From assembly GCA_010909165.1 (NCBI GenBank), contig MU008167.1, positions 1,178,001 through 1,242,000 on the forward strand: a stretch of 64,000 bases of DNA, given 5' to 3'. A program made the translations under genes and the position numbers. The notes beneath the pieces are model-generated. The model was not told the DNA's origin. It made no database searches and saw only the letters and a program-made list of their open reading frames with translations. This document shows, piece after piece, positions 3,212 through 64,000 of this stretch (within the stretch, counting starts at the first letter, position 1; every line of letters starts with the position of its first letter). The DNA comes from Anthoceros angustus. Lineage: Eukaryota > Plantae > Anthocerotophyta.

Positions 3212-4867
3212 CTAGAGAGAATAGATATCATCCACAAGCACATGAATCTTCACGCATCCAGAGTACATAGCAACGCAAGGGAACAGCTCAAACGGAAGAT
3301 CAGAGAATGCAGCGTCCTGCATCTCTACGAAACCGTCATCCACGCCCGATCTTGTGCTGAAGGTACATACTCGATCCGTCATGTTCAAATGCACCGCGAT
3401 CACGCTACCCTGTTCCTCACAGAAAGGGATTCCGCGCAAGGGCAGTGCGGGCTTACTACCACTACTACACAGGGCTTGTACAGCCGAAGTCTCATGACAC
3501 AACTCCCCGCTGCTGCGCAAACCCCATCCCCATGAGGTCTCATAAAACAACGGTCTCTCTTGCATGGGCCTCTTGTCCTTCATCCACAGCGCCTTCCGCT
3601 CATGGAATCCCACAACCAACCCATCACACGGCTCCAGCAAGATGATGGCCCACGACCAAATCCCCCTGGCTCTGTTCATCGGCCTGATGGTAGACGACGC
3701 CAGATGCGTCTTCTCCCCCCTCTGATCTCTCCAATTCAATTTCACACGAAGCACAGACCTGTCCTCCAGAACTTCCAGCTCCGGGCTCATGCATTTCTCA
3801 TCCCATGAAATCACGGCCGCCCTGTCCCCGGCATTCCACTCCGCTTGCCACCGATCATTGGCCACACCCACGCGCTCCCAGACATCCGGACACGCTTCCA
3901 GCAACGGCATCAGCAGCGTCAGCAGCAGCGTGGCATGGATGAGATCGAACCTGACCACGTCCCAGCCTTGCTCGCATCCAAATGCCAATTTCTCCACCCA
4001 GAGTTCCATGGAGGACACCGATTCCGGGTCGGGCATGAAGTTCCACATGTTGCCGCCCGTGTTGGGTTCCAGAAGCTGCGGCCACATCGATGGGAGCCTG
4101 TCTTCATCCGCCAGGCAGGCCATCATCTGCAGACCCACTTCCGAATCCATGCACCCCGACTTGCACATTGCCCAGATGAGCACATGCCGCAGCCGCAGGT
4201 ACTCCATGACGGAGTAGGCTCCTTCTCCGCTCTCAGTCCGGGTCCATGCCAGATAGACCTGGAAAGCTCTCACCGACATAGCCTGCAGATGCTGGACCTC
4301 CAACGGCCCAGCACGCATCACCATGCACATTTCCTGGATCAGCCTATGCAGCATCACATCCCTCCATGCCTCCGTGTCTGTACCTTGGCCCGGTAGCATG
4401 TTCACGTGGACTCGGAGGCACTTCAATATGTCGGCCTTCTTCAGAGAGCCCACAAGCTCACAGAAACAACTCACCGTCATCTGTAGATGCTGCACCTCCA
4501 CCTGCTCGTGCCTGTAGATGCAGAACACCTCGATCAGGGTGGAGAGCAGCTCTTTCTCCCCATCTGGCAAACCCAGAAACCGGCATATGTATAGCAGGCG
4601 GATGGCACGCCGATGTCTCATGCGCGTTTGGTCGTAATCTGGAACCTCCGTCTGGGAGTAATCACTCACTATGAGCCCACACTCGCACCTGATCCCGTGT
4701 ATCTTTTCGGACAAGGAGTCATCCAGGATTTTGCACTTTTCATAGCAGATTGTTGCCACACGGAATATCACCTCGCAGTGCCTGCAAAGATGCTTGACCT
4801 CGGGCATTTTCTCATCATCAGCCCCATCGCCAGGCGATACATCATCCTGTGGATTTTCTGCCTGCAT
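3212..4867 (-). CDS. 551-aa single-exon protein with an unknown helical N-terminal region and a C-terminal SPRY/B30.2-like domain
   Basis: Uninterrupted 551-codon ORF. The C-terminal ~200 aa carry SPRY-type motifs: WDEKCMSPELEVLED, WSWAIILLEPCDGLVVGF, GWGLRSSGELCH, GSVIAVHLNMTDRVCTFS and FSDLPFELFPCVAMY. Assigned by motif only. Confidence 0.75.
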   Translation of the reverse strand: MQAENPQDDVSPGDGADDEKMPEVKHLCRHCEVIFRVATICYEKCKILDDSLSEKIHGIRCECGLIVSDYSQTEVPDYDQTRMRHRRAIRLLYICRFLGLPDGEKELLSTLIEVFCIYRHEQVEVQHLQMTVSCFCELVGSLKKADILKCLRVHVNMLPGQGTDTEAWRDVMLHRLIQEMCMVMRAGPLEVQHLQAMSVRAFQVYLAWTRTESGEGAYSVMEYLRLRHVLIWAMCKSGCMDSEVGLQMMACLADEDRLPSMWPQLLEPNTGGNMWNFMPDPESVSSMELWVEKLAFGCEQGWDVVRFDLIHATLLLTLLMPLLEACPDVWERVGVANDRWQAEWNAGDRAAVISWDEKCMSPELEVLEDRSVLRVKLNWRDQRGEKTHLASSTIRPMNRARGIWSWAIILLEPCDGLVVGFHERKALWMKDKRPMQERPLFYETSWGWGLRSSGELCHETSAVQALCSSGSKPALPLRGIPFCEEQGSVIAVHLNMTDRVCTFSTRSGVDDGFVEMQDAAFSDLPFELFPCVAMYSGCVKIHVLVDDIYSL

Positions 4868-6508: not shown

Positions 6509-7077
6509 TCATATTTATTATATGCATTTGCAGTGACGAAGCTGCTCATGCCGTGATTAAGTGCGAGATTCTCTCCTATAACTTGATTAAAAATAATACA
6601 TCTTCTCATAAGTTGAAAATTATTGCACAATTGGAATCCCAAGTGAATTTAATATCGTCAATAGCTTTTTTCTAATAAGCTAAACCTATGAACAAAATGA
6701 GGTATGCACATAAACTCTCTAAACTCAAGGTCTAATTGGTTATACGACTTCCACCAATTAGTAGAATGTTTTCAACAATTTTTTATATTTATGGTTTCGT
6801 ATTCAACAATTCTCTAGATCTTTGTAATTTTTATTCAATAAATTTATACATTTATGGTTTCACATGAAGTTCAAAGATACATATGGAAATCTTTCATCAT
6901 CCACATGGTCTCATACAAGAAAATCAAAATGCTTTTAAAATAAATGGGGTATATAAATGTCTTAGCAGCTATGAGACAGTCTAGTGACTAGCGTAGCTAA
7001 GAATATTTGTGATTGCAACCAAGAAGAGAAGAAACTTGAAGGCTTTCACTATTGTTAAGTAGCGCTGGGTAAAGTGC

Positions 7078-7617
7078 CATGCCATAACACATGCACCCAC
7101 TTCGCCCATGCCATAACACATGCCATAATACATGCATCCACTTTACCCATGCCATAATACATGCATCCACTCTACCCATGCCATAACACATGCAATAACA
7201 CATGCATCCACTTTACCCATGCCATAACACATGCCATAACACATGCCATAACACATGCCATAACACATGCATCCACTCTACCCATGCCATAACACATGCC
7301 ATAACTCATGCATCCACTTTATCCATGCCATAGCACATGCTATAACACATGCATCCACTCTACCCATGCCATAACACATGCCATAATACATGCATCCACT
7401 TTACCCATGTCATAACACATGCCATAACACATGCATCCACTCTACCCATGCCACAACACATGCACCCATTGTACGCATGCCATAATCCATGCCATAACAC
7501 ATGCACCCACTTTACCCATGCCATAACCCAAGCCATAACACATGCACCCACTTTACCCATGCCATAACCCAAGCCATAACACATGCACCCACTTTACCCA
7601 TGCCATAACACATGCAC
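7078..7617. repeat. Compound minisatellite built from ccataacacatg and ca(t/c)ccact(t/c)tacccatg subunits
   Basis: About 540 bp of interleaved ~12-bp and ~17-bp subunits, rich in CATG/CATGCA, ending ~690 bp upstream of the RLK start codon. Confidence 0.95.
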
Positions 7618-8308
7618 CCCGAGTCTATCCACCGAAACCACAAAGTGTGAAGCTCCACAGACTCACGAGGAATTTTTTCTCATGCTCCAGAACTTGCGCC
7701 GTTCCCAGTGCTTGCACTGCCACACCTGTGTGCTGCTCACAGGCTGGATCCTGCGAGTACACCATTTAGCACGGTACAGACTGTCGGTGCAGCACCTTCG
7801 GCTCATTTTACGGCAAGATATGTACATAGTCGGTAAGCCTTTAGATATCAGAGTGGAGTCCAGGAAGCACGGTGTGACAGCACCGCAGACACGATGGAAC
7901 TGGTACCTACCTACAGTTTACGGGCAGTAGCTTGTAAAGCGTGTTACGCATGAGCAGTGGCCAGTCCTTCTCACTCACTCGTACTGGTCTATTCTCTCTT
8001 TCCATCAAGATAGTGCACATAGTTCTAATACTCCGTTGGATTGTGGGCTTGGCGGCTTGATTCTGCTGTTGCTTATCCTTTGAAGACGGTGCTCAATCTG
8101 ATCAGTGGTCCTCTTAGACCCGCTGGCTGTGTAGGCCCCCATAGCAATTGATGGTATGTACCGGCAGCCACTTAGACGTGTGGAAGTCTCTGGCCGTTGG
8201 CCTTCGATCAGAACCTTCCCTACTGGATGTCTGCAGGATGCACCAGGCCTCAAGGCTGTAACTGCTCAATGCATTCTGGGATCCTGAGACTGCCAATTTT
8301 CATCCAGA

Positions 8309-10794
8309 ATGAAGTGTGTATGTTGGGTTATTCTGGTCTTGGCATACCAGATTATCCCACGGCCTTGGAGAATCGATGCACAGGATGTTCCGGTTCCCAC
8401 CTGCTACACTCGAGGAGCCAGGAATGCGACTTTAGATTTCTACTGGATCGCAAAAGAGGGAACCGAAGACGCCGAGTCCTACTGGGCGCCCCGTCTCCAG
8501 CTGGGTTCAGGGCCGAAAAACAACTCTCTTGTGGCTGACGACGGCTCTTTAATTGCGATGGTAGACACAGCCACAGACAGCAGGTGCCTGGACTTGGGTA
8601 CTTGCCTTCTTGATAATGGGCAACTCATCAACCTTGGCCTCACCGCTAGCACCTTCCGGATTCTGGACAAGAGAATTTTCCCATTCGGCATTGGCTCCAG
8701 AAGCAATCCTCTTGTGCCATTCGTTAGTGTGGGTAATCAGTTGCCGTTCCATACGACTCTGTGTATCAAGGAGCTGGAGAACTGGAAGCTTCCCAACAAC
8801 AAGACACATAATGGATGCGTTCGTGTAGACGACTCCAGTGGAACAGACTTGTCTGAAGCATGTCATGTCACGTTTTTTGTGCTGAAGTTTGCTTTCTTTG
8901 ATCGGATGCTGGGTGCTAACCTCCCGACAAACGTCACTGCAAGTATCTGTAGTTGCAAGATCCTGGACTACACAACCCAAGACATGTATGCGTTTGTGGA
9001 TGGTAAACTTGAAACTTATACCTTTTGCGGGCACAACCTGTTTGAGTTTGGAGAAAAGAATTTAAGGAACAGTTGTCTGTGACGGGGATCATGATTTTTG
9101 GTTGTGTGCACGTTCTTGTCTTGCAGTGAGTCCACCATCAGCTAGATCGAAAGGATCACCACACGTGATGGTGTGGGTGGGCGTTGCATTTGGTGTTCTA
9201 CTTTTGCTGGCTATGGGCTTCGTCGGATTCTATTGCCTGAAGAAGAAGTGTTGTCACGAGCAGATGGAGCACCTCTCATTGATTTCACGCCGCAGAGATG
9301 TAGAAGGTGAAAGATGAGAAGGATCTTACTTACGATCTTGAGTAACAAGAATACTTGTGCCAGTCGAATTCATCTCCAAATGGCTAACTGGCAGGAGGAT
9401 GCGTCCGTTTCCTCAGCTTACAAAGACATCGGAGCCGGCCTCCAAATGTTCTCCCTCAGCTTTATAAAGTCAGCCACAGCGAGATTTAGTGTTCGAAACA
9501 AGCTAGGCGAAGGAGGCTTTGGAGTTGTATACAAGGTGCGTAAAGTGTTCAACCTGCAGCAATGACATTGGGCTCAGGCAGCATTCCTGACAACATGTAG
9601 TGGTTGTCCTCCTACTTGGCAGGGAGTTCTGCCGGATGGGACAGAAGTGGCAGTGAAGCAAATGGCAAAAACCGGTTCCTCAAGGCAAGGAACACCCGAG
9701 TTTATGAATGAGGTGGCTCTAATCGGACAGTCACAGCATGAGAACTTGGTGAAGCTTTATGGGTACTGTCTAGAAGGTGAAGAGAGGCTGTTGGTGTACG
9801 AATTCATGGAAAAGGGCAATCTCCACCAAGCACTTTTTGGTATACATAAAAGTTATAGCTTCATTCACCGAGAAGTCGTGCAGCTGTACCTTCCCTTAGG
9901 CATGATAAGCTGAGATTTTCTTGCACCTGTAGGGAAAGACCGGCATCCGCTCTCTTGGAAGGCTCGGTACAACATCATTCTGGGAACTGCCAAAGGTCTG
10001 GCATACCTTCATCACAGCCAGAGACGGATAGTCCATCGTGATATCAAGGCCAGCAATGTGCTCCTAGACAAATATCTGCAGCCAAAAATATCTGATTTCG
10101 GTCTGGCCAAGTTCTTTGTGGAAGAGAAGAGTCATGTCAGTACTAGGGTTGCCGGCACCATGTAAGCTGCATCACTCTCAAGCATCATATGGTTACTGAA
10201 CTGGATCTGGAAAGGTCCCTTCTGACCACTTGGTGTTGGTTGATGCCATGTGCATTCAGGGGCTACCTTGCACCTGAATACGCCTTGACGGGGCAGCTCA
10301 CAGAAAAAGCAGATATCTTCAGCTTTGGAGTGCTAGTTCTGGAAGTTGTTAGTGGTCGAAGAAACATGGATTACAGAGACGCCAGAGCACCAGTGTTTCT
10401 GCTCGAATGGGTATACGTCCAGCTACAACCCAGGACCCATACATAATGCAATCAACATTCATTCCGTTGCGAAACACTAACATGTCAAGACCTGAATCTG
10501 TAGGCTTGGGACAGGTATGACGGAGGTAAACTACAGGACATCCTTGACCCCAAGATAAAGGAGGACCCTGAAGCTGTACCCGACGAAGTGTTCAAGTTGG
10601 TGCATATTGCTCTTCTTTGTGCCCAAGGGACACCCCAGAGGCGGCCCAGCATCAAAGATGTCATTTTTATGTTGGAGGGCAACACTGAGTGTACCTCAGC
10701 GCCATCCAGGCCAGAATTTCTGAGGAACACTTCTGCTATCCTACAGTCAAGTAGTTTTGTAGAAGATTGGCAGTTTTTGCAACCTCGTGAATAG
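8309..10794 (+). CDS. Receptor-like kinase: signal peptide + 3D/MltA-like ectodomain + TM + RD Ser/Thr kinase (LRR-VIII/DUF26-group kinase), 7 exons, 631 aa
   Basis: Exons 8309-9002, 9127-9299, 9395-9535, 9623-9839, 9933-10161, 10260-10410 and 10504-10794. All introns are GT..AG, phases are consistent and there is no internal stop; the intron-2 donor is the least certain. N-terminus [16 protein letters not shown]; [27 protein letters not shown] followed by KKK. Kinase motifs are intact: [58 protein letters not shown] and [20 protein letters not shown]. Confidence 0.92.
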
Positions 10795-11267
10795 GTATAG
10801 AGCGGAGTGCTAGACGGGTAAATCCTTGTCATAGTTCTTCAAAATCGACAGTCCTACAAGGTGCTGGATATGGTAAGCACATCCTTCACTGTAAACTTCA
10901 ACGGTCTCCATACACTTGCTTTTGCCAAAATGCAGAATACTTGAGATAACGTAGCAACTTCAAGTCTTGACTTGTATGCGATTCCTGCCGGCGATGAAAA
11001 GACAGGTTGATAAGTTTTGGTTGTTCCATCCAGACCTGGGTCATCGCAAGCTCTTCACACTGTTGGTGTCTTGTTCTCTATTCATTGTCTGGACCGCTGA
11101 AATGGTATGCACCAACATCCGGAACTCATGATTTCTTCTGTTCAAGTCGTAATGCCTACTAGGTTCTAGGAGCTTCAAGCAACACTAGGTTTCCAAGTCT
11201 GAAAAATTCTCCTGTAAAGAATTTATGTTGAAGTGTTCACTTCACATGCTGTATAATGTACTTCCAC

Positions 11268-37075: not shown

Positions 37076-40000
37076 GTAGGCACCCATCAGGTGATTGAAA
37101 TCCTAGAACATGATAGTGCAATGATGTGCCACTAACAGTAAATGGCATCATAGCCCTCCCTATGTGGCCAGAACATGGACCTTCCCTGAAAACTTCGACT
37201 CCAGCATCCCTTCATTATTTCCCCGTCAACACAAGGATCCAGTGTTCTTGCAGCTACAGATTCCGGGATCAGTTTGAGGAAACATGGCAGCAGCTCCAGG
37301 AGTTCAAAAGTCGACTTGAGGCTGACATCGGCTACTGACAAAAGCATATATGCCCAACTAGCTGACCAACAGCTGGTGTAAACACAAAGAGTGCATGCAA
37401 GTCTAAAGTTCCACACAGAAAGACTGCATTCACCTAAAAGGAATAACAAGGCTAAGTGCCCACGCCGTCGTACATCACCACATTGCCGTCTCCCTGGAGA
37501 GAGACGGTGCGGCTGCCGTCGTTTTGGCAACATGTGTTTGGTGGTGAAACCACTTACCGCCTTCAGTGTAGACGATGGGCTGTAAATGAGAAGGCGGAAA
37601 GAGCTGTTGGTGCCATTGAACCGACTGCCTGCACCTCGGCTTGGCAAAGCACAAGCTTGCAATCGGACTGCATCAAAAGAAAATAAGGCTCACGGATCAA
37701 TGATGCCCCATGCAGAAGCTTGAGCTTATTGCCTATGAGCAGGACATACCCTGCCTCCCCTGGCTGCTAAGCCACCAGATCCCAGAAGACCTATATCACC
37801 AGTATGAGTCTCAAAAAAGTGGACACCATTGGGACTGCGAACCTGCAGGCCTGCGAACATACAGGCCTGTTCTTCAGGCCGACTTTTAAGCAGAAGGGCA
37901 ACCTTGGCTACCTGCAGAAATGTCCTGAGCACCGTTTTGCTAAAACAGATCGTTATCATTACTGAAGGTCCACTCCCAAGCTGTAGTCCAGCATGGCCAT
38001 CCCCACTATGTACGGCAAGGTATATCACACCATAGGAGAAATGGTACAACGGGTAATACTCCGTCCTCATAAAGAGGACAATGCAGTTCCCAACGCTTCC
38101 ACAGTCGTTCCTGTTCACTGAAGTAAACGATAGATGTGGATCCACTAACTTCATCTGCAGCACGCTCCAGATACTCCTCCTGGGTGTACATGGCATATGG
38201 GGCTGCATAACTGGAACCCGTAAAGATCGGCCAAATGGCCCTCTGTTGGATTGAATGCAATGAAGTTGAAGCCCCAGTCTTGCGAATCAGAGTCAGTGAG
38301 TTCATTAAAACCCGAATTACCATCAAAAAGTTCATGAAGCTCAATGTTCCTCTCAATATCCCATTCATTGGGGTGGTCACTGACGAGCTGGTCTTGTGCA
38401 TCACGCTGTGGGCCTCGTGCTCTCGAAATCCCTGTGATCTGTAGGCAGCCAGTGAAATAACTCCTCTGGAGTTCTATGTTGAGGCCTTTGAGGTTTCAAA
38501 TCTTTACGGGAGGTCCTTCCGGGCCACTTCTTCTCTCCCTTACGCCAGACGGCCCCCGCCCCTTCGAATTCTTTTCATTGTGTGAGCAGCCTCTAAATCA
38601 ACACCAAGAACCCATCGCCGCCTCGTCTTTTATCAGGCACCACAATCCAACGAACACCAGCCAGATCGTATGGTTTCTCCAGCGAACTCTACACTGCAAT
38701 ACAGCTTAGCTAAGCTTACAGGCAGGACTGACTTTGCCCCTATAAGGAAGGAGAGATTTTATGTTCCCAACTCGTATTGAAGTTTATATATATATATATA
38801 TATATATATCATGTGTATAATTAAACATAATATTAATACAAATTTTCTAACAATAAATATACTAACTGAGATATTAAAATAAGTAACATATATATAATTT
38901 ATTTTTTGTGTATATATTATACAGATGAAATATATAATCTATAATTTATTATTTATTATTTAGCTTAATTAAATATTGACAGTAATAAATACTAGGAAAA
39001 CGGTATTCAAACGTTGTTACTTACTCCTCTGTCAATAAAAAGCTTTGATTTACTTACTCCTTTGTCAGTAAAATATTTTAATTTATGTATTTCTATTTTG
39101 AGGTGAAATATTCAAATTTGATTGATAGATTTATGTTATATAGACAAATTCAATTTTGATCGATGGATTTCTTGATCAGACACAGGTTCTTCAATCATAT
39201 ATAAACAATAAATTATCGCTTTACGTATATCAAAATATGTTTTGAATTTGATTGGTAGATTCTTTCACACCATAGGTTCATCACCAGTAAATCATCACTT
39301 TGGATTCCAAGAAAATAGTATTTGTAGTCGCTATATAGATTCTATCATGAATATTACATATTTCTTGATGCTCACATATGGAAACATTGTTCTCTATTTT
39401 GATTTGCGCCCACATGAAAATAACATGAGTGATCGGTGGAGTCCTAGAAATCCTTAAATTCTTACCATCGATTACTTGGTGGTGCACAAATAAAATTTTA
39501 TGTAAGCCATCTGACCATTCACCACCGTTTACACATTCTCTATTTAGGGTGGTGTTCAAGGTTTTGGTCGTGTGTGTGTTGTGAGGGTTGTTTAACAAGG
39601 GCTTTAGAGTTAAGGTTTAGGATTGTGCAACTAGGGTTTCCTTGATAAGTTCAATAAGGGTTTCCTTGGTAAGGTTATGAGAAGCCAACTATAGTAGTAT
39701 GATCTAGCACAACGGAGAAAATATTAAATAATATAAGAGAATGAGACTGTCTGACCACGTACCATCATCCACGTTTCTTCATTGGTTGGCGCACACATAA
39801 AAATACGGTGGGTTCTCAATAATTGGTTTTTCTTTTACCACCATCACTTCCTTTATTTCAATTGGTGCACACATAAAAATAATAGCTACTTCCTCTATTC
39901 TAATTGATGAACACATAAAAATAATAGCTACTTCCTCTATTCTAATTCATGAACATATAAAAATAATATAACTGATCCGACCACTTATCATTGTCCACGT

Positions 40001-41339
40001 TCTCTCTTTTGATTAGCGCACGCATAAAAATAATATAAATGTTCGTGGAATCTACTTGCAACTTACATGTTCGCTATTTTGATTTGTGTTGAGGTAGTGG
40101 AAAAAATTCACCGACCACTTCAATTGTATTTAATGATGGCAGAAGATCTCCGTGGACACTATTTAAGCGCTCAAATTCACTATTTAAGCGCTCAAATTCA
40201 GTGCATCTTGCATTCTTGCATTCTGACGCAATGACTTGGTTGGATGTCGCGAGGAGCTCCGGATTCAGTGGGTCTCAGTTCAGATGTGGCGAGGAGCTCC
40301 GAGGTTCTGTTGGTCTTGGTTGGATGTGGCGAGGAGCTTCGAGCTCTTGGGGTTTTGGTTTGTGTAATGAGGAAGCTACGTGCTTAGAGGAGCTTCGAGG
40401 TCTAGGGGATTTGGTCGGTGTATTGAAGAAGCTAGGTGCTTAGAAGTCTTGGTAGACTTGCAGTGAAGAAGAGATGCATAGGGATGTGAAATACATGTCT
40501 TATGAGAGGATTGCATAGAATTCAGTAGGTATTGATGTCCAGAAGGCAAAGTATTGAATGTGTGTCGCTGCCGCCGCGCAAGGGTTGCACATGCAACTAG
40601 GGTTTTCTTGGGGAGATAGAGTATGTGCAACAAGGGTTACCTAGGTGAGCCAGATTATTCTCAGTGTGTCATGAAGCCTAGGGTTGGTTGTGCAACAAGG
40701 GTTTCCTTGGTGAGATAGAGTATGTGTAATGAGGAAGCTACGTGCTTAGAGGAGCTTCGAGGTCTAGGGGATTTGGTCGGTGTATTGAAGAAGCTAGGTG
40801 CTTAGAAGTCTTGGTAGACTTGCAGTGAAGAAGAGATGCATAGGGATGTGAAATACATGTCTTATGAGAGGATTGCATAGAATTGGTGAGTATTGATGTC
40901 CGTAAGGGTATTGAATGTGTGTATAAGCTGCGGTTGCACATGCAACTAGGGTTTTCTTGGGGAGATAGAGTATGTGCAACAAGGGTTACCTAGGTGAGCC
41001 AGATTATTCTCAGTGTGTCATGAAGCCTAGGGTTGTGCAACAAGGGTTTCCTTGGTGAGATAGAGTATGTGCAACAAAGGTTACCTAGGTGAGGCAGTGT
41101 ATTTTGAGTGTGTTGTGAAGCCTAGGGTTGTGCAACAAGTTTTCTTGGTGAGGTAGAGTATGTGCAACAAGGGTTACCTAGGTGAGGCAGAGTATTCTAA
41201 GTGTGTTGTGAAGCCTAGAGTTGTGCAAAAAGGATTTCCTTGGTGAGGCAGAGTATGTGCAACAAGGGTGCCCTTGGCGAGGCAGAGTATTTTGAGTGTG
41301 TTGTGAAGCCTAGGGTTGTGCAAAAAGGATTTTCTTGGT

Positions 41340-41960
41340 TAGGCAGAGTCCGGCCTAGGGTAATGTAACAAGGGTTTCCTTTGTGAGGCAGAGTCTGGAC
41401 TAGGGTTGTACAACAAGGGTTTCCTTGGTGAGGCAGAGACCGGCCTAGGGTTATGTAACAAGGGTTTCCTTAGAGAGGCAGAGTCTGGTCTAGGGTTGTA
41501 CAATAAAGGTTTCCTTGGTGAGGTAGAGACCGGGCTAAGGTTATGTAACAAGGGTTTCCTTGGTGAAGAAGAGTCTGGTCTAGGGTTGTACAATAAGGGT
41601 TTCCTTGGTGAGGCAGAGTCTAGCCTAGGGTTGTACAATAAGGGTTTCCTTGGTAAGGAAGAGTCTGGCCTAGGGTTGTACAACAAGGGTTTCCTTAGTG
41701 AGGTAGAGACTGGCCTAGGGTTGTACAACAAGGGTTTCCTTAGTGAGGTAGAGTATGTGCAACAAGGGTTTCCTTAGTGTGGCAGTCCGCCTAGGGTTGT
41801 GCAACAAGGGTTGTACAATAAAGGTTTTCTTGGTGAGGTAGAGTCTGGCCAAGGGTTATAGAACAAGGGTTTTCTTGGTGAGGCAGAGTCTAACCTAGGG
41901 TTGTACAATAACGGTTTCCTTAGTGTGGCAGAGTCTGGCTCAGGATTGTACAACAAGGGT
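41340..41960. repeat. 45-bp satellite, second array
   Basis: Same unit as 31655-32235, followed by the ~36-38-bp array at 41.98-42.22 kb. There is also a ~360-bp direct duplication, 40365-40720 / 40727-41075. Confidence 0.95.
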
Positions 41961-43494
41961 TTTCTTGGTGAGGCCTAGTATTCAATTCGTGTATCATAAA
42001 GCTTAGGGTTGTGTATTCACTTTGTGTACCATAAAACCTAGGGTTGTGTATTTAGTCCGTGTATTATAAAGCTTAGTTAGGGGTGTGTATTCAGTTTGTG
42101 TATCATAAAAGCTAGAGTTGTGTATTCAGTTCGTATATCATAAAGCCTAGGGTTGTGTATTTAGTCTGTGTATCATAAAACCTAGAGTTGTGTATTCAGT
42201 CTATGTATCATAAAGCCTAGGCTTATGCAACAAGGATTTCCTTGGTGATTGAGAGTATGTGCAATAAGGGTTTCCTCGAAGAGGTAGAGCATATTCAGTG
42301 TGTGGTTAGACCAAGGGTTTTCTTGGTGAAGGGAAGTCCGGCCTAGGGTTATATAACAAGGGTTTCCTTGGTGAGGTGGAGTCCAGCCTAAGGTTGTACA
42401 ACAAGGGTTTGATAGGTGAGGCAGAGTATTCAATTCGGGTATCATAAAGCCTAGGGTTATGCAACAAGGCTTTTCTTGGTTAGGAGAGCTGTCCGTGTAT
42501 GTATCATGAGGGTTGTGCAACAAGTGTTCCATTCATGATGTATGCATAGCTAACTTGATATTCCTGTGTCAGTTGAATTAACATATGATATTTTGGATAT
42601 GTTATCTTACATACCTTAACTAATGATATTTTGGATAGGTTATCTTACATTTCCAACCAGCCTTCAACTAATGATATTTTGGTTGGGTTATCTTACATAC
42701 CAGTTTGTGGTTGGTTGCATCAGCCTTCAACAGATTTGTTTCAATGGGTCTGTTATTTCAAGAGATCAGTGGTTTGCATTGGAGGTGCCAACCTTGTGCT
42801 TCCCTCAAAGTCACCTCTTTGCAGTGGTATGACAAGTGACGTAATTTCAATTGAAACCCTAGCAATTTGCCATCTCATTGTTTAGAATGCCATGGCTCAT
42901 GGCAATCTCATCCGATCTGGATCACCAAGATTGATTGCGAGTGCAGGCGGGCGCTAACGACACCAACAATTGCCCTTGCGATATTCCCTCACCGATTATC
43001 TAGACACGGGCACTCTGGCAGCTTCAGACCAACTCTTTTTCAATCCTCAGGTTTCAAATTCGGGTCCGACAGTGTGCCCATCCAAGCTTCGGTAGTGAAT
43101 CCCAAGATGGGTACACTCTTGAGCTCGATCTGAGTCCTGAAGACGGAGAAGAAATGGGTCTGAAGCTGCCATATTTCCTGAGTCTGGATCCTCATGAGCT
43201 GCTCTCCTAGGGTGGTAACCAACGATATGAGCGACAAGGCTACATCCCGTCACTGTGGTTGCAGGTATCATCCGCGGAGGGCACCCACCAACGATGACAA
43301 AGCAGACACCAACGACGACAAAGCAAAGAGAGAGGGTCGCGTTCGATAGTTTGCCCACTTTGAGTTGGTCATCGCGATATTCCCTCATCGGTTATCCAGA
43401 TACGGGCACTCTGGCAGCTTCAGCTCAACTCTCTTTCATCCTCAGGGCTCGGATTGGGGTCGGCAGCAGCCATCGAGATTGCGATTATTCAATC

Positions 43495-53093: not shown

Positions 53094-53594
53094 TTACATG
53101 AAGTCTCTATCTCCTTGTTCGTATCTGGCAATAACACGTTGCAACTCACGATACAAGACCGGCCCATCGAATTCATTGTTACCCTGAATTGCATTTTCTC
53201 CGTGTTGTGTAATGATTTGTACACTCCTTATATAAATTGTTATATCTAGCATTCTTCTCCTTGCTACGATATCTTGTATCATTTGATTATCATCTTGAGA
53301 TATTAAACCAACATTGTTGTCTCTTGATTGTAGATTATTATCTTGAGGTATCAAACCAACATTGTTATCTCTTGTTTGTATTGCTCGTCTACATATCGGG
53401 CAATGAATGGGCCTTGGACAACTATGCAACCATGGATCTAAACACATTTTATGAAATTCATGGGCACATAAGTCTATTTTAGTAATTTCCTCGCCCACCT
53501 CAAAAGCATGAAGGCAGATTGGGCAAACCACTTCTGGATCATCAAGTCTTCCAATTTGATAGATAGATAGGTTATAAATCAAATATGGGTCCAT
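53094..53594 (-). CDS. RING-H2 zinc-finger protein (putative E3 ligase), ~166 aa; start codon uncertain
   Basis: CPICLHAFEVGEEITKIDLCAHEFHKMCLDPWL...CPIC is a complete C3H2C3 RING-H2. It is followed by a 13-aa tandem duplication (RDNNVGLI.QD.N). The ORF extends upstream to 53780 in AT-rich sequence. No TM segment was seen. Confidence 0.7.
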   Translation of the reverse strand: MDPYLIYNLSIYQIGRLDDPEVVCPICLHAFEVGEEITKIDLCAHEFHKMCLDPWLHSCPRPIHCPICRRAIQTRDNNVGLIPQDNNLQSRDNNVGLISQDDNQMIQDIVARRRMLDITIYIRSVQIITQHGENAIQGNNEFDGPVLYRELQRVIARYEQGDRDFM

Positions 53595-53929
53595 AACTCT
53601 TAAGAATATTTTACATATGAAATAAGTATTCATAAAAGTATGAGAGTAAATAGTATAAAGATACTTATTGAGTGATCGACTTTCACAGGGAGCTGCTTTA
53701 CATATATAGACCTTCGTGAATATATATCCATACTCTATATATAGGATTAGAATTTTTTTGTTAACTCCTACACTCCTCATGAAATTAGTTCAAACTGAGC
53801 ATTTGATGAAATTAGTTCCAACTAAGCATTTGATGATACTGGCTCAACCTGAGCATTCCATGAAATAATTGGCTCAAGCTGAGCATCGGATGCATTCATA
53901 TGGCTTATGGCCTCTAACCCATCTCAAGC

Positions 53930-55345
53930 TTGACATGTCACTTTTCTTGTGCTGGAGTTTTTATTCTTCTGGAGACAAACTTCACTGCTAATATTGGGTA
54001 CTAACCTGGAGACAAACTTCACTGCTAATATCTGTAGTTGCGAGATCCTAGACTACACAACATATATGCGTTCGTGGATGATACGCTTGTAACATGTCTT
54101 CTGCAGGCACAACCTGATAGTTTGTTGCATTGAGTTTGGAGAAAAGCATTCGAACTGCAGTCTGTGACGGGGCTCATGATTTTTGGATGTGCGCACGTCC
54201 GTCGACCATGAATGAGGTGGCTCTAATCGGACAGGTCACACATGAGAACTTGGTGAAGCTTCATGGGTACTGTTTAGAAGGAGAGGAGATGCAGCTGTTG
54301 GTGTACGAATTCGTAGAGAAGGGCACTTTCCACCAGGCACTCTTTGGTATTCATGAAAGCTGGCACAAATTTGAACTATTGAAGTAATTCAACGTGATCG
54401 AATTCCAAGGACCATGACCAGGATTTATCCATCCAACACTGCCGATCTGTGCCTATTTCCGAGACTGTCGATCTTCGACAAAACGTCTGGAGTATAGGAT
54501 AGCGGGAGTTTTACTTAGAAATTCTGTCCTCGATGACACTGAGGTATACTCACTTTGGACCTGCAACATAGAAATGGCCTCTCTGATGCTGGGCCGCCTC
54601 TGGGGTGTTCCTTGGACACAAAGAGAAGCAATATGCACCAACTTCAACACCTCCTCGGGTCCAGCTTCAGGGTCCTCCTTAATCCTGGCCTGTAGTATGT
54701 CCTGTAGTTCACCGTCTTCATACCTGTAGGCTGTCCCAAGCCGATCCAGATTCAGGTCTTGTTAGTGTTTCAAAAGGGAATGACGTTGATTGCATCCTGG
54801 GTTGTAGCTGGCCGTATACCCATTCGAGCAAAAACACTGGTGCAATGGCGTTTCTGAAGTCCCTGTTTCTTCGACCACTAACAACTTCCAGAACCAGCAC
54901 TCCAAAGCTGAAGGTATCTGCTTTTTCTGTGAGCTGCCGCGCCAAAGCGTATTCAAGGTGCAAGGTAGCCCCTGAGTGCACATGGCATCAACCAACACCA
55001 ACTGGTCAGAAGGGACCTTTTCAGATCCAGATGCGATCCAGATGCAGTAACCATACGATGCTTAAAAGGGACGCATGGGTTACATGGTGCCGACAACCCT
55101 AGAGCTGACATGACTCTACCATACTTGTGTCCCCTGAATTCATCTCCAAATCGTTTACTGGCAGGAGGATGCGTCTGTTTTCTCAGCTTACGAAGACATC
55201 GGAGCTGGCCTCCAAATGTTCTCTCTCGGCGGTAGAAAGTCAACCACAGTGAGATTTGAGGTTCGAAACAAGCTGGGCGAGGGCGGCCTTGAAAATTGTC
55301 CATGAAACCTGCAGCGATAATATTGGGCTCAAGAAGCATTCCTAC
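53930..55345. pseudogene. Scrambled relic of a second 3D-ectodomain RLK
   Basis: 53930-54200 (+) holds the ectodomain end (HVTFLVLEF...SCEILDYTT) and intron 1. 54207-54355 (+) is the second half of kinase exon 4, 54400-55095 (-) is exons 5-7 and 55120-55345 (+) is the exon 3 region. Deletions and frameshifts throughout. Confidence 0.88.
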
Positions 55346-58205: not shown

Positions 58206-58859
58206 TCAAGTGTAGGAGAGGATTTGGCAATCAGGCTTGATCACGGCATGGACTGTGTCAGGCAGAACTTGCTCCAGTGCCTTGTACTGCGCGAAGTACT
58301 TGACGAAGAAATCGATGTGGCACTCGTCGAAGTAGCCGCGATCGTCCACCCGGACGCATCCGTTGTGGACTTTCCCACTGGGAAGCCTCACGTTATGCAG
58401 CGCCTGAACGTAGAGCTTGGTGAAGGCGGGGAGATCGACGGTGGCCACGCTCACATACGGCACCAGCGCGTTCTCGAACCCGCCTTGTCCGAACGGGTAC
58501 TTCGACCTGTCAAGGATCTCGAACACGTCCGACGCGCTGCCCGCGTTGATGAGGTCCCCGTTGGTGAGAAGGCACGTTCCTTCTTCCACGCACTTGCTGT
58601 AGGTCTTGGCATCCACCCTGGCGATGGTGCTGCCGTCTTCCCCGATGATGGACTTGGTTTTGGGTCCCGTCAAGGTGATGGGTTCCCCGTCGTCGGTCTC
58701 GTCCTGGAAGCCTTCCCTGGCGATCCAGTACTGCGTGAATGTGAGGTCGCTCCGGCCGTTGTAGCAGGATGCGCTGGCTTGGGGCAGAGCTGCCAGCGTG
58801 CATAGGAAGCAAGCAGCCAGTGCAAGACACACGAGCCTGCTGCTGCTGTTGGTGGCCAT
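58206..58859 (-). CDS. Secreted 3D/MltA-like domain protein, 217 aa, intronless
   Basis: MATNSSSRLVCLALAACFLCTLAALPQASA is a signal peptide. The mature domain is homologous to the RLK ectodomain ([45 protein letters not shown]). 3D-type motifs are present: T.YW, SVATVDLPAFTKLYV and VDDRG..HIDFFV. GC-rich coding, intact ORF. Confidence 0.88.
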   Translation of the reverse strand: MATNSSSRLVCLALAACFLCTLAALPQASASCYNGRSDLTFTQYWIAREGFQDETDDGEPITLTGPKTKSIIGEDGSTIARVDAKTYSKCVEEGTCLLTNGDLINAGSASDVFEILDRSKYPFGQGGFENALVPYVSVATVDLPAFTKLYVQALHNVRLPSGKVHNGCVRVDDRGYFDECHIDFFVKYFAQYKALEQVLPDTVHAVIKPDCQILSYT

Positions 58860-59699: not shown

Positions 59700-62600
59700 G
59701 CATTACCATATCCAGCACCTTGTAGGATTGTCGACGTCCAAGGACCATGACCAGGATTTAACCATCCAGCACTCCCGATCTGTACCTATTTCCGAGATGG
59801 CAAAAACTGACAATCATCGACAAAACTACTGGCCTGTAGGATAGCAGGAGTGTTACTGAGAAATTCTGGCCTGAATGGCTCTGAGGTGCACTCACTGTGG
59901 CCCTGCAACATAGAAATGACCTCTTTGATGCTGGGCCGCCTCTGGGGTGTTCCTTGGGCACAAAGTAGAGCAATGTGCACCGACTTGAACACCTCCTCTG
60001 CTGCAGCTTCAGAGTCATCCTTGATCCTGGGGTCAAGTATGTCCTGTAGTTTACCATCTTCATTCCTGTCCCAGGCTGCAGATTCAGAACTTGTTAGTGT
60101 TTCAAAATGGACTGAACATTGCATTATTGATTGGTCCTGGGTTGTAGCTGGAAGACCCATTCCAGCAGAAACACTGGTGCCCTGGCGTCCCTGAAATCCA
60201 TGTTTCTTCGACCATTAACAACTTCCAGAACCAGCACTCCAAAGCTGAAAATATCAGCTTTTTCAAGGCGTATTCAGGTGCAAGGTACCCTTTCAGTGCA
60301 CATGGCATTAACCAACAGTACCAACTGGTCAGAAGGGACCTTTCCACATCCAGATCCAGTCACCATTTGATGTTAAAAAAGTGATGCATTGCTTACGCCG
60401 GCAAACCTAGTGCTGACATGACTCTTCTCTTCTACAAAGAACTTGGTCGGACCGAACTCAGAGATTTTTGGCTGCAAGTTTTGTCTAGGAGCACATTGCT
60501 GGCCTTGATACCACGATGGACTATCCGTCTCTTACTTTGATGAAGGTAAGCCAGACCTTTGGCAGTTCCCAGAAGCCTAAGTTGTCACACACAAGCCGCC
60601 TGGTGACGACTTGGGTGTTCCATGGTCATTGCCGGTCATTGCCCTGGTCACTCTGTGAGCCTTCACCCTTGTGCCCGTTGAATTCATCTCCACCTGGCTA
60701 ACTGGCACAAGGATGCGTCCGGTTCCTCAGCTTACAAAGGCATCGGAGCCGGCCTCCAAATGTATTCTCTCAGTGCTATAAAGTCAGCCACAGCGAGATT
60801 TGATGTTCGAAACAAGCTGGGCGAGGGAGGCTTTGGAATTGCATACGAGGTGCATAAAGTGTTCAACCTGCAGCAATGACATTGGGCTCAAGCATTCCTG
60901 ACTAGGTACATAGAGTGGTTGTACTCCTCCCTGGCAGGGAGTTTTGCAGGATGGGACAGAAGTGGCGGTGAAACATATGGCAAAGACCTCAAGTCAAGGA
61001 ACACCCGAGTTTATGAATTAGGTGGCTCTAATTGGACACTCACAGCATGAGAACTTGGTGAAGCTTTTTGTGTACTGTCTAGAAGCAGAGGAGGGGTTAT
61101 TGGTGTACGAATTCATGGAGACGGGCCACCTCCACCAAGAACTCTTTGGTATTCATGAAAGCTTTAGCTTCATTCATTGTTGCACCTGTAGAGACCGGCA
61201 TCCGCTCTCCGGAAGCCTTTCAACATCGTTCTTGAACTGCCAAAGGTCTGGCATGCCCTTCATCAAAGTCAGAGACGGATATTTCATCGTGATATCAAGG
61301 CCAGCAATGTGCTCCTAGGCCAAAAGTCTGCGACTTCGGTCTGGCCAAGTTCAGAGGAGAAGAGACATGTCAGCACTAGGGTTGCCGGCACCATGCATCA
61401 CTTTCAAGCATCAATTGGTTACTGAATCTGGATGCGGAAAGGTCCTTCTGACCAGTTAGTGTTGGTTGATGCCATGTGCACTCAGTGTTAACCAGTGTTT
61501 CTGCTCGAATGGGTATCGTCCAGCTACAACCCAGGACCAATAGATAACGCAATGTTCAGTCCCTTTGAAACACTAACAAGTCCTGATTCTGCAGGCCTGG
61601 GACAGGTATGAAGAAGGTAAACTACAGGACAGTTGACCAGGATCAAGGATTACCTTGTAGGATTGTCGACGTCCAAGGACCATGACCAGGATTTAACCAT
61701 CCAGCACTCCCGATCTGTACCTATTTCCGAGATGGCAAAACTGACAATCATCGACAAAACTACTGGCCTGTAGGATAGCAGGAGTGTTACTGAGAAATTC
61801 TGGCCTGAATGGCTCTGAGGTGCACTCACTGTGGCCCTGCAACATAGAAATGACCTCTTTGATGCTGGGCCGCCTCTGGGGTGTTCCTTGGGCACAAAGT
61901 AGAGCAATGTGCCGACTTGAACACCTCCTCTGCTGCAGCTTCAGAGTCATCCTTGATCCTGGGGTCAAGTATGTCCTGTAGTTTACCATCTTCATTCCTG
62001 TCCCAGGCTGCAGATTCAGAACTTGTTAGTGTTTCAAAATGGACTGAACATTGCATTATTGATTGGTCCTGGGTTGTAGCTGCACCAGAAGAGGTGTTCA
62101 AGTTGGTGCATATTGCTCTATTTTGTGCCCAAGGAACACCCCAGAGGCGGCCCAGCATCAAAGAGATCATTTCTATGTTGCAGGGCCACAGTGAATGTAC
62201 CTCAGTGCCATCCAGGCCAGAATGTTGAGTAACACTTCTGCTATCCTACAGTCCAGTAGCTTTGTCGAAGACTGGCAGTTTTGCCACTTCGGAAATAGGT
62301 ACAGATTGGGAGTGATTGGTGTTGACAATTCTATCCAAACTTGGGTTACGGCAACCCCTTCAAACCAAGTCTCACAGATTTTTGGCTGCAAGTTTTGTCT
62401 AGGAGCACATTGCTGGCCTTGATACCACGATGGACTATCCGTCTCTTACTTTGATGAAGGTAAGCCAGACCTTTGGCAGTTCCCAGAAGCCTAAGTTGTC
62501 ACACACAAGCCGCCTGGTGACGACTTGGGTGTTCCATGGTCATTGCCGGTCATTGCCCTGGTCACTCTGTGAGCCTTCACCCTTGTGCCCGTTGAATTCA

Positions 62601-63890
62601 TCTCCACCTGGCTAACTGGCACAAGGATGCGTCCGGTTCCTCAGCTTACAAAGGCATCGGAGCCGGCCTCCAAATGTATTCTCTCAGTGCTATAAAGTCA
62701 GCCACAGCGAGATTTGATGTTCGAAACAAGCTGGGCGAGGGAGGCTTTGGAATTGCATACGAGGTGCATAAAGTGTTCAACCTGCAGCAATGACATTGGG
62801 CTCATGAAGCATTCCTGACTAGGTACATAGAGTGGTTGTACTCCTCCCTGGCAGGGAGTTTTGCAGGATGGGACAGAAGTGGCGGTGAAACATATGGCAA
62901 AGACCTCAAGTCAAGGAACACCCGAGTTTATGAATTAGGTGGCTCTAATTGGACACTCACAGCATGAGAACTTGGTGAAGCTTTTTGTGTACTGTCTAGA
63001 AGCAGAGGAGGGGTTATTGGTGTACGAATTCATGGAGACGGGCCACCTCCACCAAGAACTCTTTGGTATTCATGAAAGCTTTAGCTTCATTCATTGTTGC
63101 ACCTGTAGAGAGACCGGCATCCGCTCTCCTGGAAGCCTCGGTTCAACATCGTTCTTGGAACTGCCAAAGGTCTGGCATGCCCTTCATCAAAGTCAGAGAC
63201 GGATATTTCATCGTGATATCAAGGCCAGCAATGTGCTCCTAGGCCAAAAGTCTGCGACTTCGGTCTGGCCAAGTTCAGAGGAGAAGAGACATGTCAGCAC
63301 TAGGGTTGCCGGCACCATGCATCACTTTCAAGCATCAATTGGTTACTGAATCTGGATGCGGAAAGGTCCCTTCTGACCAGTTAGTGTTGGTTGATGCCAT
63401 GTGCACTCAGTGTTAACCAGTGTTTCTGCTCGAATGGGTATCGTCCAGCTACAACCCAGGACCAATAGATAACGCAATGTTCAGTCCCTTTTGAAACACT
63501 AACAAGTCCTGATTCTGCAGGCCTGGGACAGGTATGAAGAAGGTAAACTACAGGACAGTTGACCCAGGATCAAGGATTACCTTGTAGCTGCACCAGAAGA
63601 GGTGTTCAAGTTGGTGCATATTGCTCTATTTTGTGCCCAAGGAACACCCCAGAGGCGGCCCAGCATCAAAGAGATCATTTCTATGTTGCAGGGCCACAGT
63701 GAATGTACCTCAGTGCCATCCAGGCCAGAATGTTGAGTAACACTTCTGCTATCCTACAGTCCAGTAGCTTTGTCGAAGACTGGCAGTTTTTGCCACTTCG
63801 GAAATAGGTACAGATTGGGAGTGATTGGTGTTGACAATTCTATCCAAACTTGGGTTACGGCAACCCCTTCAAACCAAGTCTCACAGATGG
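59700..63890. pseudogene. Mosaic of RLK kinase pseudogene blocks in both orientations
   Basis: 59700-60578 (-) holds exons 5-7 and 60660-61655 (+) exons 3-7, with an in-frame TAG at ~61020 and frameshifts. 61656-62081 repeats 59720-60150. 62376-63583 repeats 60453-61655 and 63584-63888 repeats 62077-62385. Confidence 0.9.
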
Positions 63891-64000
63891 TGTATTGTTC
63901 CCTGTATGTACATTGGCTGGACCGCTGAATCGATGTGCACCAACATCCGGAACTCGTGATTTTCTCGGTTCATCCCGTGATGCCCACTGGGTGTTAGACG

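What the first reader, a model, noticed from the sequence alone, without database searches (positions are those of the whole stretch)
58206..58859. Secreted stand-alone 3D-like protein resembling fungal (Mucoromycota-type) secreted proteins: possible horizontal acquisition
Seen: an intronless, GC-rich 217-aa secreted protein homologous to the RLK ectodomain. From memory, not from a search, the motif string SCY...TQYWI..EG..D..DG..ITLTG.KTK.....G.TIA.V...TY.K...EGT.LL.NG..IN......F..LDR...P.G.G....LVP.VSVA..DL...[28 protein letters not shown] matches small secreted 3D-domain proteins of early-diverging fungi. I do not associate it with seed plants. Inferred: the domain entered this plant lineage by horizontal transfer and was then recruited as a receptor ectodomain.
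Basis: partly seen in the sequence, partly recalled or inferred. Interest (0 to 1): 0.82.

Follow-up and report, generated by a model that had tools for sequence, protein, structure and literature searches.

The report
Fungal-derived secreted enzyme gene in hornwort
A plant (probably hornwort) genome carries an intact gene for a small secreted, cell-wall-cutting-type enzyme whose only close relatives are in Mucoromycota fungi; this fungus-to-plant transfer was published in 2020, but a catalytically disabled copy serving as the outer domain of a neighbouring receptor kinase appears undescribed.

Summary
An intact, intronless, GC-rich 217-aa ORF lies at 58206-58859 on the minus strand. It has a signal peptide and is 46% identical to exon 1 of a seven-exon receptor kinase at 8309-10794.

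Pfam finds nothing, but the AlphaFold model matches MltA lytic transglycosylases (Z 10-11). The three aspartates of the 3D domain, including the catalytic one, are present.

An exhaustive search of 1.84 billion representatives found relatives only in early-diverging fungi among named hits. One other land-plant sample holds three stand-alone copies and one receptor-kinase copy. The plant sequences nest among Endogonales and Bifiguratus proteins; forcing them outside Mucoromycotina gives AU p = 0.038. Flanking DNA is plant DNA.

The transfer is already published: Zhang et al. 2020 (Anthoceros angustus genome, Supplementary Fig. 84) report "3D domain proteins" acquired from Mucoromycota.

I did not find three points described elsewhere:
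- Both receptor ectodomains have lost the catalytic Asp, which 109 of 113 family members keep.
- The enzyme and receptor genes are neighbours in an inverted duplication with reciprocal decay.
- The split between the two forms predates the divergence of two plant species.

Expression was not shown.

The parts
58206..58859 (-). Stand-alone secreted MltA-like/3D-type protein gene: 217 aa plus stop, no intron
   Evidence: ORF; full-length alignment; fold; GC3 0.79
58770..58859 (-). Signal peptide, residues 1-30, with likely cleavage ASA|SCY
   Evidence: Read from the sequence. The model shows an N-terminal helix 9-19 at low pLDDT. The alignment shows that mature domains start at SCY. No signal-peptide predictor was available.
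58311..58313 (-). Codon of Asp183, equivalent to the catalytic Asp (MltA D308 / YuiC D162)
   Evidence: alignment; D in 109 of 113 family members; PMC4499186 for the mapping of the three Asp
8309..10794 (+). Intact RLK gene of 631 aa. Exons: 8309-9002, 9127-9299, 9395-9535, 9623-9839, 9933-10161, 10260-10410, 10504-10794
   Evidence: open frame, all introns GT-AG, 87-124 nt; Pkinase on exons 4-6; best PDB matches are plant RLK/Pelle kinases
8309..9002 (+). RLK exon 1: signal peptide plus MltA-like ectodomain. First Asp replaced (N-Q) and catalytic Asp replaced by Thr188 (codon 8870-8872)
   Evidence: 46% identity to the stand-alone; Asp columns; model pLDDT 90.6; MltA Z 10.8
9127..9299 (+). 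RLK exon 2: transmembrane helix ([23 protein letters not shown]) followed by a basic stop-transfer motif (KKK)
   Evidence: (translation), read from the sequence
11904..12181 (+). Decayed stand-alone copy downstream of the intact RLK. The signal peptide is joined to the last third of the gene, about residues 39-162 are deleted, and a 1-nt insertion shifts the frame
   Evidence: two HSPs in different frames; 12012-12290 matches 58374-58107 at 76%; alignment
59703..60574 (-). Kinase pseudogene fragment upstream of the stand-alone gene; counterpart of the 3' half of the RLK
   Evidence: 84% nt identity to 9978-10876, inverted; tblastn fragments only, no ectodomain
60457..64000 (.). Rearranged, recently duplicated kinase fragments on both strands (units 99% identical)
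53922..55343 (.). Further broken RLK copy: the C-terminal end of the ectodomain plus kinase pieces on both strands

Best explanation
The gene encodes a small secreted protein of a family otherwise found in early-diverging fungi. It is a stripped-down MltA-type (3D-domain, double-psi beta-barrel) lytic transglycosylase-like enzyme. An ancestor of this plant, probably a hornwort, acquired it from a Mucoromycotina fungus close to Endogonales, which are known hornwort symbionts. After transfer the gene duplicated. One lineage stayed a stand-alone secreted protein and keeps all three active-site aspartates. The other lineage was joined to a transmembrane segment and a plant RLK/Pelle kinase, and it lost the catalytic Asp. 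The most likely working model is this: the stand-alone protein is exported to the apoplast and cuts or binds GlcNAc-containing microbial glycans (peptidoglycan or chitin), while the neighbouring receptor uses the same fold, catalytically dead, as a glycan-binding sensor. Shown here: the ORF, the fold, the residues, the phylogenetic placement, the plant context, and the RLK architecture in two plants. Inferred: secretion, substrate, enzymatic activity, any defence role, the order of events, and that the gene is expressed.
For: Fold. The model has pLDDT 89. MltA entries fill the top of the Foldseek list (E 5e-5, probability 1.0) and the VIA list (Z 10.1-10.9, 156-165 of about 187 mature residues). 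YuiC (3D domain) scores Z 7.9.
Active site. D142, D172 and D183 align with the three Asp of Pfam-3D-positive relatives. The third Asp is the catalytic one in MltA and YuiC (PMC4499186).
Distribution. An exhaustive phmmer search gave 374 hits, the best at 46-51% identity. Named hits are Endogone, Jimgerdemannia, Bifiguratus, Mucorales, Rhizophagus, Geosiphon, Basidiobolus, Dimargaris, Entomophthora and chytrids. No named plant protein appears.
Tree. The plant rows sit inside a clade (support 92/91) with Endogone, Jimgerdemannia and Bifiguratus. Forcing named Mucoromycotina to exclude the plants costs 19 lnL, AU p = 0.038. Plant monophyly is not rejected (p = 0.30).
Plant context. The same window holds an RLK with plant-type kinase and introns, a DUF26 ORF, a RING-H2 gene and a copia element. 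The second plant's copies sit beside a PLS-class PPR gene and an ACD11-like gene.
Substrate hint. Fungal family members are fused to LysM, CBM19 or GH18 domains.
Loss of the catalytic Asp. Both RLK ectodomains have lost it, whereas 109 of 113 family members keep it. The RLK ectodomain model still has the MltA fold (Z 10.8).
Literature. Zhang et al. 2020, Supplementary Fig. 84.
Against: No RNA evidence: the one possible RNA run of the sample laid nothing on the gene.
The Pfam 3D and MltA models do not hit the protein, and no PDB chain matches by sequence. The enzyme assignment therefore rests on a predicted fold and on motif alignment.
The AU rejection of a position outside Mucoromycotina is marginal (p = 0.038, 197 columns).
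Several near neighbours in the tree (P0001, P0002, P0005, P0007) are unnamed environmental sequences.
The identity of both plants is inferred, not shown.
The only DNA run holding the stretch differs by three one-base omissions inside the ORF. All three lie in homopolymers, among 11 such omissions in 2.7 kb, so they are most likely read errors.
Confidence: 0.72

Rival explanations
1. There were two independent transfers from Endogonales-like fungi. One gave the stand-alone lineage and the other gave the lineage that became the RLK ectodomain.
For: In both trees the two plant clades are not sisters. The RLK-ectodomain pair groups with Endogone P0003 and environmental P0001/P0002/P0005. The stand-alone clade is separate.
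Against: Holding all six plant rows together costs only 4 lnL (AU p = 0.30). The two forms are adjacent in the genome. Plant sequences share derived states absent from the fungi, such as YWIA instead of YWIP.
Confidence: 0.13
2. The gene is an ancient eukaryotic gene inherited vertically and lost from nearly all plants and algae.
For: The family also occurs in a protist-like EukProt entry (P0020). Plant monophyly is not rejected.
Against: The plant rows nest deep inside Mucoromycotina rather than outside fungi (AU p = 0.038). No other plant or algal hit appeared among 1.84 billion representatives or in two word-based searches with names.
Confidence: 0.04
3. The gene is fungal contamination or an assembly chimera.
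For: Hornworts harbour Mucoromycotina endophytes. The gene has no intron and a GC3 very different from its flanks.
Against: The gene lies 930 bp from a plant RLK pseudogene. Its locus and flanks are duplicated in inverted orientation elsewhere in the same window. A paralogue is spliced to a plant kinase. One 3,955-bp contig of run X1 spans the gene and both flanks. Best identity to any fungal protein is only about 50%.
Confidence: 0.02
4. The stand-alone copy is a silent relic that is still intact but no longer used. Only the RLK paralogue is functional.
For: No RNA contig was laid on it. Its twin at 11904-12181 has already decayed. One stand-alone copy in the second plant (P0028) has lost the catalytic Asp.
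Against: The 217-codon frame is open. All six conserved Cys and all three Asp are kept at about 46-50% identity to relatives. GC3 of 0.79 argues against neutral drift towards the AT-richer flanks. Zhang et al. kept only HGT candidates with transcript support, but I could not verify that this gene is one of theirs.
Confidence: 0.15

Closest known systems
'3D domain proteins' AANG010888 and AANG004622 of Anthoceros angustus, reported as HGT from Mucoromycota (Zhang et al. 2020, Nat Plants, Supplementary Fig. 84; PMC7027989)
   Same: The protein family, donor phylum, recipient lineage and conclusion are the same. They reported two loci on two scaffolds, and this scan has this window plus note s1-262075 on another piece.
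   Different: I could not map this ORF to either gene ID. The paper says both genes have introns, whereas this ORF has none, so one of their genes may be the RLK. The legend mentions neither a kinase fusion nor loss of the catalytic residue, and it calls the event Anthoceros-specific. Here a second, divergent land plant carries both forms.
Secreted '3D domain-containing' proteins of Mucoromycotina (Endogone sp. FLAS-F59071, Jimgerdemannia flammicorona, Bifiguratus adelaidae, Mucor, Parasitella)
   Same: They share 46-51% identity over the whole mature protein, the same length, a signal peptide, the Cys pattern and the HNGCVRVDD...C.IDFF motif.
   Different: The plant copies have YWIA where the fungi have YWIP, and TK or SK where the fungi have GT after the first Asp. 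They are embedded in plant DNA. No member of the fungal family has a tested function.
Bacterial MltA (GH102) and Firmicute Sps/YuiC 3D-domain lytic transglycosylases
   Same: They share the double-psi beta-barrel with an inserted small domain (Z 10-11 to MltA, 7.9 to YuiC). The three Asp have the same 11-residue spacing between the second and the catalytic one.
   Different: Sequence identity is only 11-17%. The protein is below the Pfam thresholds and is about half the size of MltA. It is eukaryotic and secreted, and its substrate is unknown (peptidoglycan, chitin or other).
Plant receptor kinases with glycan-binding or enzyme-derived ectodomains (LysM-RLKs such as CERK1; chitinase-like CHRK1; malectin-like RLKs)
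   Same: The architecture is signal peptide, carbohydrate-type domain, one transmembrane helix and an RLK/Pelle kinase. The kinase's best PDB matches include BAK1, SOBIR1 and CERK1. The ectodomain is a dead enzyme, as in chitinase-like RLKs (this comparison is from my own knowledge).
   Different: The ectodomain fold is MltA-like, and I did not find it among described RLK classes in the papers searched. It derives from a fungal gene rather than an ancestral plant domain.

Membership tests
MltA / 3D-domain lytic transglycosylase superfamily | Double-psi beta-barrel catalytic domain with an inserted second domain, as in MltA | tested here: met
   AlphaFold model pLDDT 89. MltA chains are the top matches: Foldseek E 5e-5 and VIA Z 10.1-10.9 over 156-165 residues with rmsd 3.5-4.3.
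MltA / 3D-domain lytic transglycosylase superfamily | Three conserved aspartates, the third being the catalytic carboxylate (MltA D261/D297/D308) | tested here: met
   D142, D172 and D183 align with the Asp of Pfam-3D-positive relatives P0142, P0180 and P0181. D172 to D183 is 11 residues, the same as D297 to D308. The mapping comes from PMC4499186. The residue superposition on a crystal structure itself was not inspected.
MltA / 3D-domain lytic transglycosylase superfamily | Match to the Pfam 3D (PF06725) or MltA models above the gathering score | tested here: not met
   The window protein has no Pfam hit at E <= 1. Only 2 of 22 close relatives touch PF06725, at E 0.066. No PDB hit by sequence profile.
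MltA / 3D-domain lytic transglycosylase superfamily | Cleaves the MurNAc-GlcNAc bond to give a 1,6-anhydro product | not testable with these tools
   This needs a zymogram or HPLC-MS assay on recombinant protein.
Early-diverging-fungal secreted 3D-like protein family | Full-length sequence homology with the conserved core HNGCVRVDD...C.IDFF and the Cys pattern | tested here: met
   E 1e-55 to 1e-60 and 46-51% identity over more than 85% of the protein. Invariant columns are listed.
Horizontally acquired gene (fungus to plant) | Recipient sequences nest inside the donor clade | tested here: met
   In the careful tree the plants lie inside the Endogonales/Bifiguratus clade (92/91). The alternative is rejected only marginally (AU p = 0.038).
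Horizontally acquired gene (fungus to plant) | Absent from other plants and algae | tested here: met
   No named plant hit. The only other plant is one unannotated sample. Limits: only the best 150 of 374 hits were listed, only about 45 were named, and the collections may lack some plant proteomes.
Horizontally acquired gene (fungus to plant) | Physically integrated among host genes, not contamination | tested here: met
   and the second plant's loci L007 and L008.
Horizontally acquired gene (fungus to plant) | Expressed in the recipient | tested here: inconclusive
   Run X2 (guessed to be RNA) laid nothing on the stretch. The tool warns that this is no proof of absence.
Plant receptor-like kinase (the neighbour at 8309-10794) | Signal peptide, ectodomain, single transmembrane helix and an RLK/Pelle-type kinase in one spliced frame | tested here: met
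   A 631-aa frame over seven exons with GT-AG introns. Pkinase hits on exons 4-6. Best PDB matches are RIPK, BAK1, PBL2, SOBIR1 and BRI1. The splicing itself is predicted, not seen in RNA.

The most novel reading that the evidence does not exclude
Hornworts may have built a new class of cell-surface receptor from a gene taken from their Mucoromycotina partners. In this reading, a catalytically dead MltA-like ectodomain on an RLK/Pelle kinase works with an adjacent, still-active secreted paralogue as an enzyme-plus-sensor pair for GlcNAc-containing microbial glycans (peptidoglycan, chitin or symbiont wall fragments). The pair would be older than the split of two divergent plant species.
Probability: 0.2. 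Interest if true: 0.75.

Novelty: already known. Interest (0 to 1): 0.4.

Why it matters
The headline, a Mucoromycota-to-hornwort transfer of a 3D-domain gene, has been in the literature since 2020, so it only confirms a published case. What may add to it is that the acquired domain was wired into plant receptor-kinase signalling. It lost its catalytic Asp in doing so, it stays genetically linked to an active-looking secreted copy, and both forms occur in a second, divergent land plant. That would be a clear example of a foreign gene becoming a new receptor ectodomain. It also gives a testable handle on how hornworts perceive bacteria or their Mucoromycotina/Glomeromycotina partners.

Tried and rejected
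- Pfam on the protein gave nothing. PDB sequence searches with two family profiles gave nothing.
- P0060, a 431-aa hit with a kinase domain, looked like another RLK fusion. It is a Bifiguratus gene model joining the 3D-like gene to an AGC-like kinase without a transmembrane segment, most likely an annotation artefact.
- I tried to place the second plant with an RNA polymerase I subunit fragment. The PDB has no plant Pol I, so this was not informative.
- An ACD11-like gene showed only that the second plant is a land plant about 45% identical to all annotated lineages.
- blastn of the other loci against the window found only coding matches, so the second sample is not the same species.
- Three literature searches for an RLK with a 3D/MltA ectodomain found none.
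- Li et al. 2020 does not discuss HGT.
- The supplements of Dong et al. 2025 are not held.
- Supplementary Table 31 of Zhang et al. is truncated in the held copy.
- The RNA check was empty.
- dN/dS was not attempted, because the plant paralogues are saturated at about 46% amino-acid identity.

Full report
**What is there.** On the minus strand, 58859 to 58206 is an uninterrupted ORF of 217 codons plus stop.
- The N-terminus (MATNSSSRLVCLALAACFLCTLAALPQASA|SCY) reads as a signal peptide. No predictor was available, so this is read from the sequence and from where the homologues' mature domains begin.
- The ORF has GC 0.59 and GC3 0.79. Its flanks have GC 0.43-0.45, and the neighbouring receptor-kinase coding sequence has GC3 0.54.
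- tblastn of the protein against the window finds a paralogue at 8399-8974(+) with 46% identity and E = 1e-44. It also finds a broken copy near 11.9-12.2 kb.

**Fold and family.**
- Pfam gives no hit even at E <= 1. Family profiles find no PDB chain by sequence.
- An AlphaFold model built on 22 homologues is confident (pLDDT 89, pTM 0.80).
- Its best structural matches are all MltA lytic transglycosylases. Foldseek gives E 5e-5 to 1e-3 at probability 1.0. VIA-align gives Z 10.1-10.9 with 156-165 aligned residues and rmsd 3.5-4.3 A.
- These are followed by the minimal 3D-domain enzyme YuiC (Z 7.9), then by expansins, kiwellin, cerato-platanin and other double-psi beta-barrels (Z 5-7).
- More distant family members (P0142, P0180, P0181) do pass Pfam 3D. 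Aligned with them, the window protein carries the three eponymous aspartates at D142, D172 and D183.
- According to the YuiC paper, YuiC D129/D151/D162 equal MltA D261/D297/D308. The third is the catalytic carboxylate, and the second contacts the N-acetyl group at subsite -2 (PMC4499186).
- The 11-residue spacing between D172 and D183 is the same. So '3D-like' is right at the level of fold and active-site motif, but not at the level of Pfam membership.

**Who else has it.**
- A word-based search of 5.8 billion proteins returned 20 hits. Every named one was from Mucoromycota (Endogone, Mucor, Parasitella, Backusella, Cokeromyces, Mycotypha, Thamnidium), at 43-51% identity.
- Because the claim rests on absence from plants, I also ran the exhaustive phmmer search over 1.84 billion representatives. 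It gave 374 hits at E <= 1e-3 and 26 at E <= 1e-30, none above 51% identity.
- Name look-ups for 30 representatives across the tree gave only early-diverging fungi. These were Bifiguratus, Jimgerdemannia, Radiomyces, Rhizophagus, Geosiphon, Fennellomyces, Basidiobolus, Dimargaris, Tieghemiomyces, Entomophthora and the chytrids Nowakowskiella, Lobulomyces and Clydaea.
- A second word search with a plant-centred profile again named only Mucoromycota.
- Some fungal members are fused to LysM, CBM19 or GH18 domains. This points to GlcNAc-containing polymers as the family's substrate.

**A second plant.**
- Four top hits (P0021, P0022, P0028, P0034) all come from one Logan sample, SRR33208241.
- Their contigs are plant DNA. 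L008 carries a PLS-class PPR gene with an E motif, and an ACD11-like gene whose best named hits are all land plants at about 45% identity.
- In L007, P0034 is followed by kinase exons 61-77% identical to the window's RLK (41% over the C-terminal part). The exon-1 splice donor is at the same position...MYAFV(D/N)G.
- That plant is not the window's species. There is no nucleotide similarity outside coding sequence, and the proteins are only 39-49% identical.
- Its lineage is not established. Equal distance to angiosperms and liverworts is compatible with a hornwort.

**Phylogeny.**
- A quick tree of 113 domains and a careful tree of 53 (LG+C20+F+G4) agree.
- The plant sequences form two clades. 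The stand-alone clade holds the window protein plus P0021, P0022 and P0028 (support 94/92). The receptor clade holds the window RLK exon 1 plus P0034 (support 100/99).
- Both lie inside a clade (92/91) with Endogone, Jimgerdemannia and Bifiguratus. That clade in turn lies inside Mucoromycotina. Glomeromycotina, Zoopagomycota and chytrids lie further out.
- Holding all six plant rows together costs 4 lnL (AU p = 0.30), so one transfer followed by duplication is acceptable.
- Forcing the named Mucoromycotina to exclude the plants costs 19 lnL (AU p = 0.038). This is a modest rejection on 197 columns.
- Because the family is spread across early-diverging fungi and is otherwise missing from plants, the direction is fungus to plant.
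- Each plant clade holds both species. The stand-alone/receptor split therefore predates their divergence.

**Genomic context.**
- The window is plant nuclear DNA. It holds a DUF26 ORF, a RING-H2 gene and copia reverse transcriptase, plus the RLK.
- The RLK model has seven exons, all GT-AG, with introns of 87-124 nt, and encodes 631 aa. Its parts are a signal peptide, the MltA-like ectodomain, one transmembrane helix and an RD kinase.
- The kinase exons hit Pkinase. They resemble plant RIPK, BAK1, PBL2, SOBIR1, BRI1 and CERK1 most closely.
- Self-comparison shows an inverted segmental duplication of the unit 'RLK then stand-alone gene then downstream DNA'. The matches are 9978-10876 with 60574-59703 (84%), 12012-12290 with 58374-58107 (76%), and 12797-13017 with 57965-57733.
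- Decay has been reciprocal. On the left the RLK is intact and the stand-alone copy (11904-12181) has lost residues 39-162 or so and is frameshifted.
- On the right the stand-alone gene is intact and the kinase survives only as rearranged, recently re-duplicated fragments.

**Loss of the catalytic residue in the receptors.**
- In the 113-sequence alignment the catalytic-equivalent column is Asp in 109 sequences.
- The four exceptions are Thr in the window's RLK, Ala in the second plant's RLK, Arg in P0028 and one His.
- The window's RLK has also lost the first Asp.
- Its ectodomain still models confidently (pLDDT 90.6) as an MltA-like fold (Z 10.8).
- This is the pattern expected if an enzyme was converted to a binding module.

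**Literature.**
- Earlier notes of this scan call the genome a hornwort, and one names Anthoceros angustus. I treated that as a lead.
- The A. angustus genome paper reports five gene families acquired from fungi. Its Supplementary Fig. 84 shows '3D domain proteins' AANG010888 and AANG004622 clustering with Mucoromycota. It calls this an Anthoceros-specific HGT, with both genes flanked by plant genes on two scaffolds (PMC7027989).
- The transfer is thus already known. The legend says both genes have introns and mentions no kinase. The table with annotations is not held.
- I found no paper describing an RLK with this ectodomain.

**Caveats.**
- Expression is not shown. The only runs available are Logan contigs from one sample, and the possible RNA run laid nothing.
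- The DNA run's 3,955-bp contig covers 57000-59700 with no substitutions but 11 one-base omissions. Three are in the ORF (58428, 58556, 58715).
- The three inside the ORF sit in runs of three or four identical bases, and such omissions are spread over coding and non-coding sequence alike. The window's frame aligns end to end with its homologues. I therefore read these as read errors in the contig, which probably comes from the same sample as the assembly and is not independent.
- Only the best 150 of 374 exhaustive hits were listed and about 45 proteins named. Several tree neighbours are environmental sequences of unknown origin.

**Verdict.** Three points remain of interest:
- the receptor-kinase recruitment with loss of the catalytic Asp;
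- the linked enzyme/receptor arrangement;
- evidence that the family is older than a single Anthoceros species.

Noticed in passing
window 59717-63888: Kinase pseudogene pieces are duplicated at about 99% identity (59717-60150 with 61652-62082; 60457-61660 with 62371-63587; 62074-62379 with 63582-63888). Some are inverted, which indicates very recent local rearrangement.
   Followed up: partly
window 22454-23017 (+): A 188-aa ORF has a DUF26 (Stress-antifung, PF01657) domain at E 1e-5. It is a plant-specific secreted or receptor-type domain in the same window.
   Followed up: no
window 53094-53780 (-): A 228-aa ORF has a RING-H2 finger (zf-RING_2, E 2e-9). It lies next to a third, broken copy of the RLK at 53922-55343.
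   Followed up: no
window 14270-19880 (-): Copia-type reverse transcriptase (RVT_2, E 1e-36). The stretch 14761-17334 is repeated in tandem at 17333-19880 at 89% identity.
   Followed up: no
window 30500-32730 and 39888-42490: Two large blocks share 80-85% identity and contain internal short-period tandem repeats with strong GC skew. They look like a satellite-like array duplicated within the window.
   Followed up: no
window 7077-7631: A tandem array of roughly 100-110 bp has both strands open as His/Cys/Thr-rich ORFs (HPLYPCHNTCHNTC...). This is probably simple repeat DNA, not a gene.
   Followed up: no
window 3212-4867 (-): The longest ORF in the window (551 aa) has no Pfam match and lies in a GC-rich stretch (0.54).
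   Followed up: partly
L006 6001-7661 (Bifiguratus adelaidae, GCA_002261195.1): The annotated protein P0060 joins a 3D-like N-terminus directly to an AGC-like kinase with no transmembrane segment. This is probably two genes merged by the annotator.
   Followed up: partly
L004 2809-3501 (second plant, P0022): One stand-alone copy in the second plant has GC3 of only 0.33, against 0.61-0.69 for its paralogues and 0.79 for the window's gene. The paralogues differ strikingly in codon usage.
   Followed up: no
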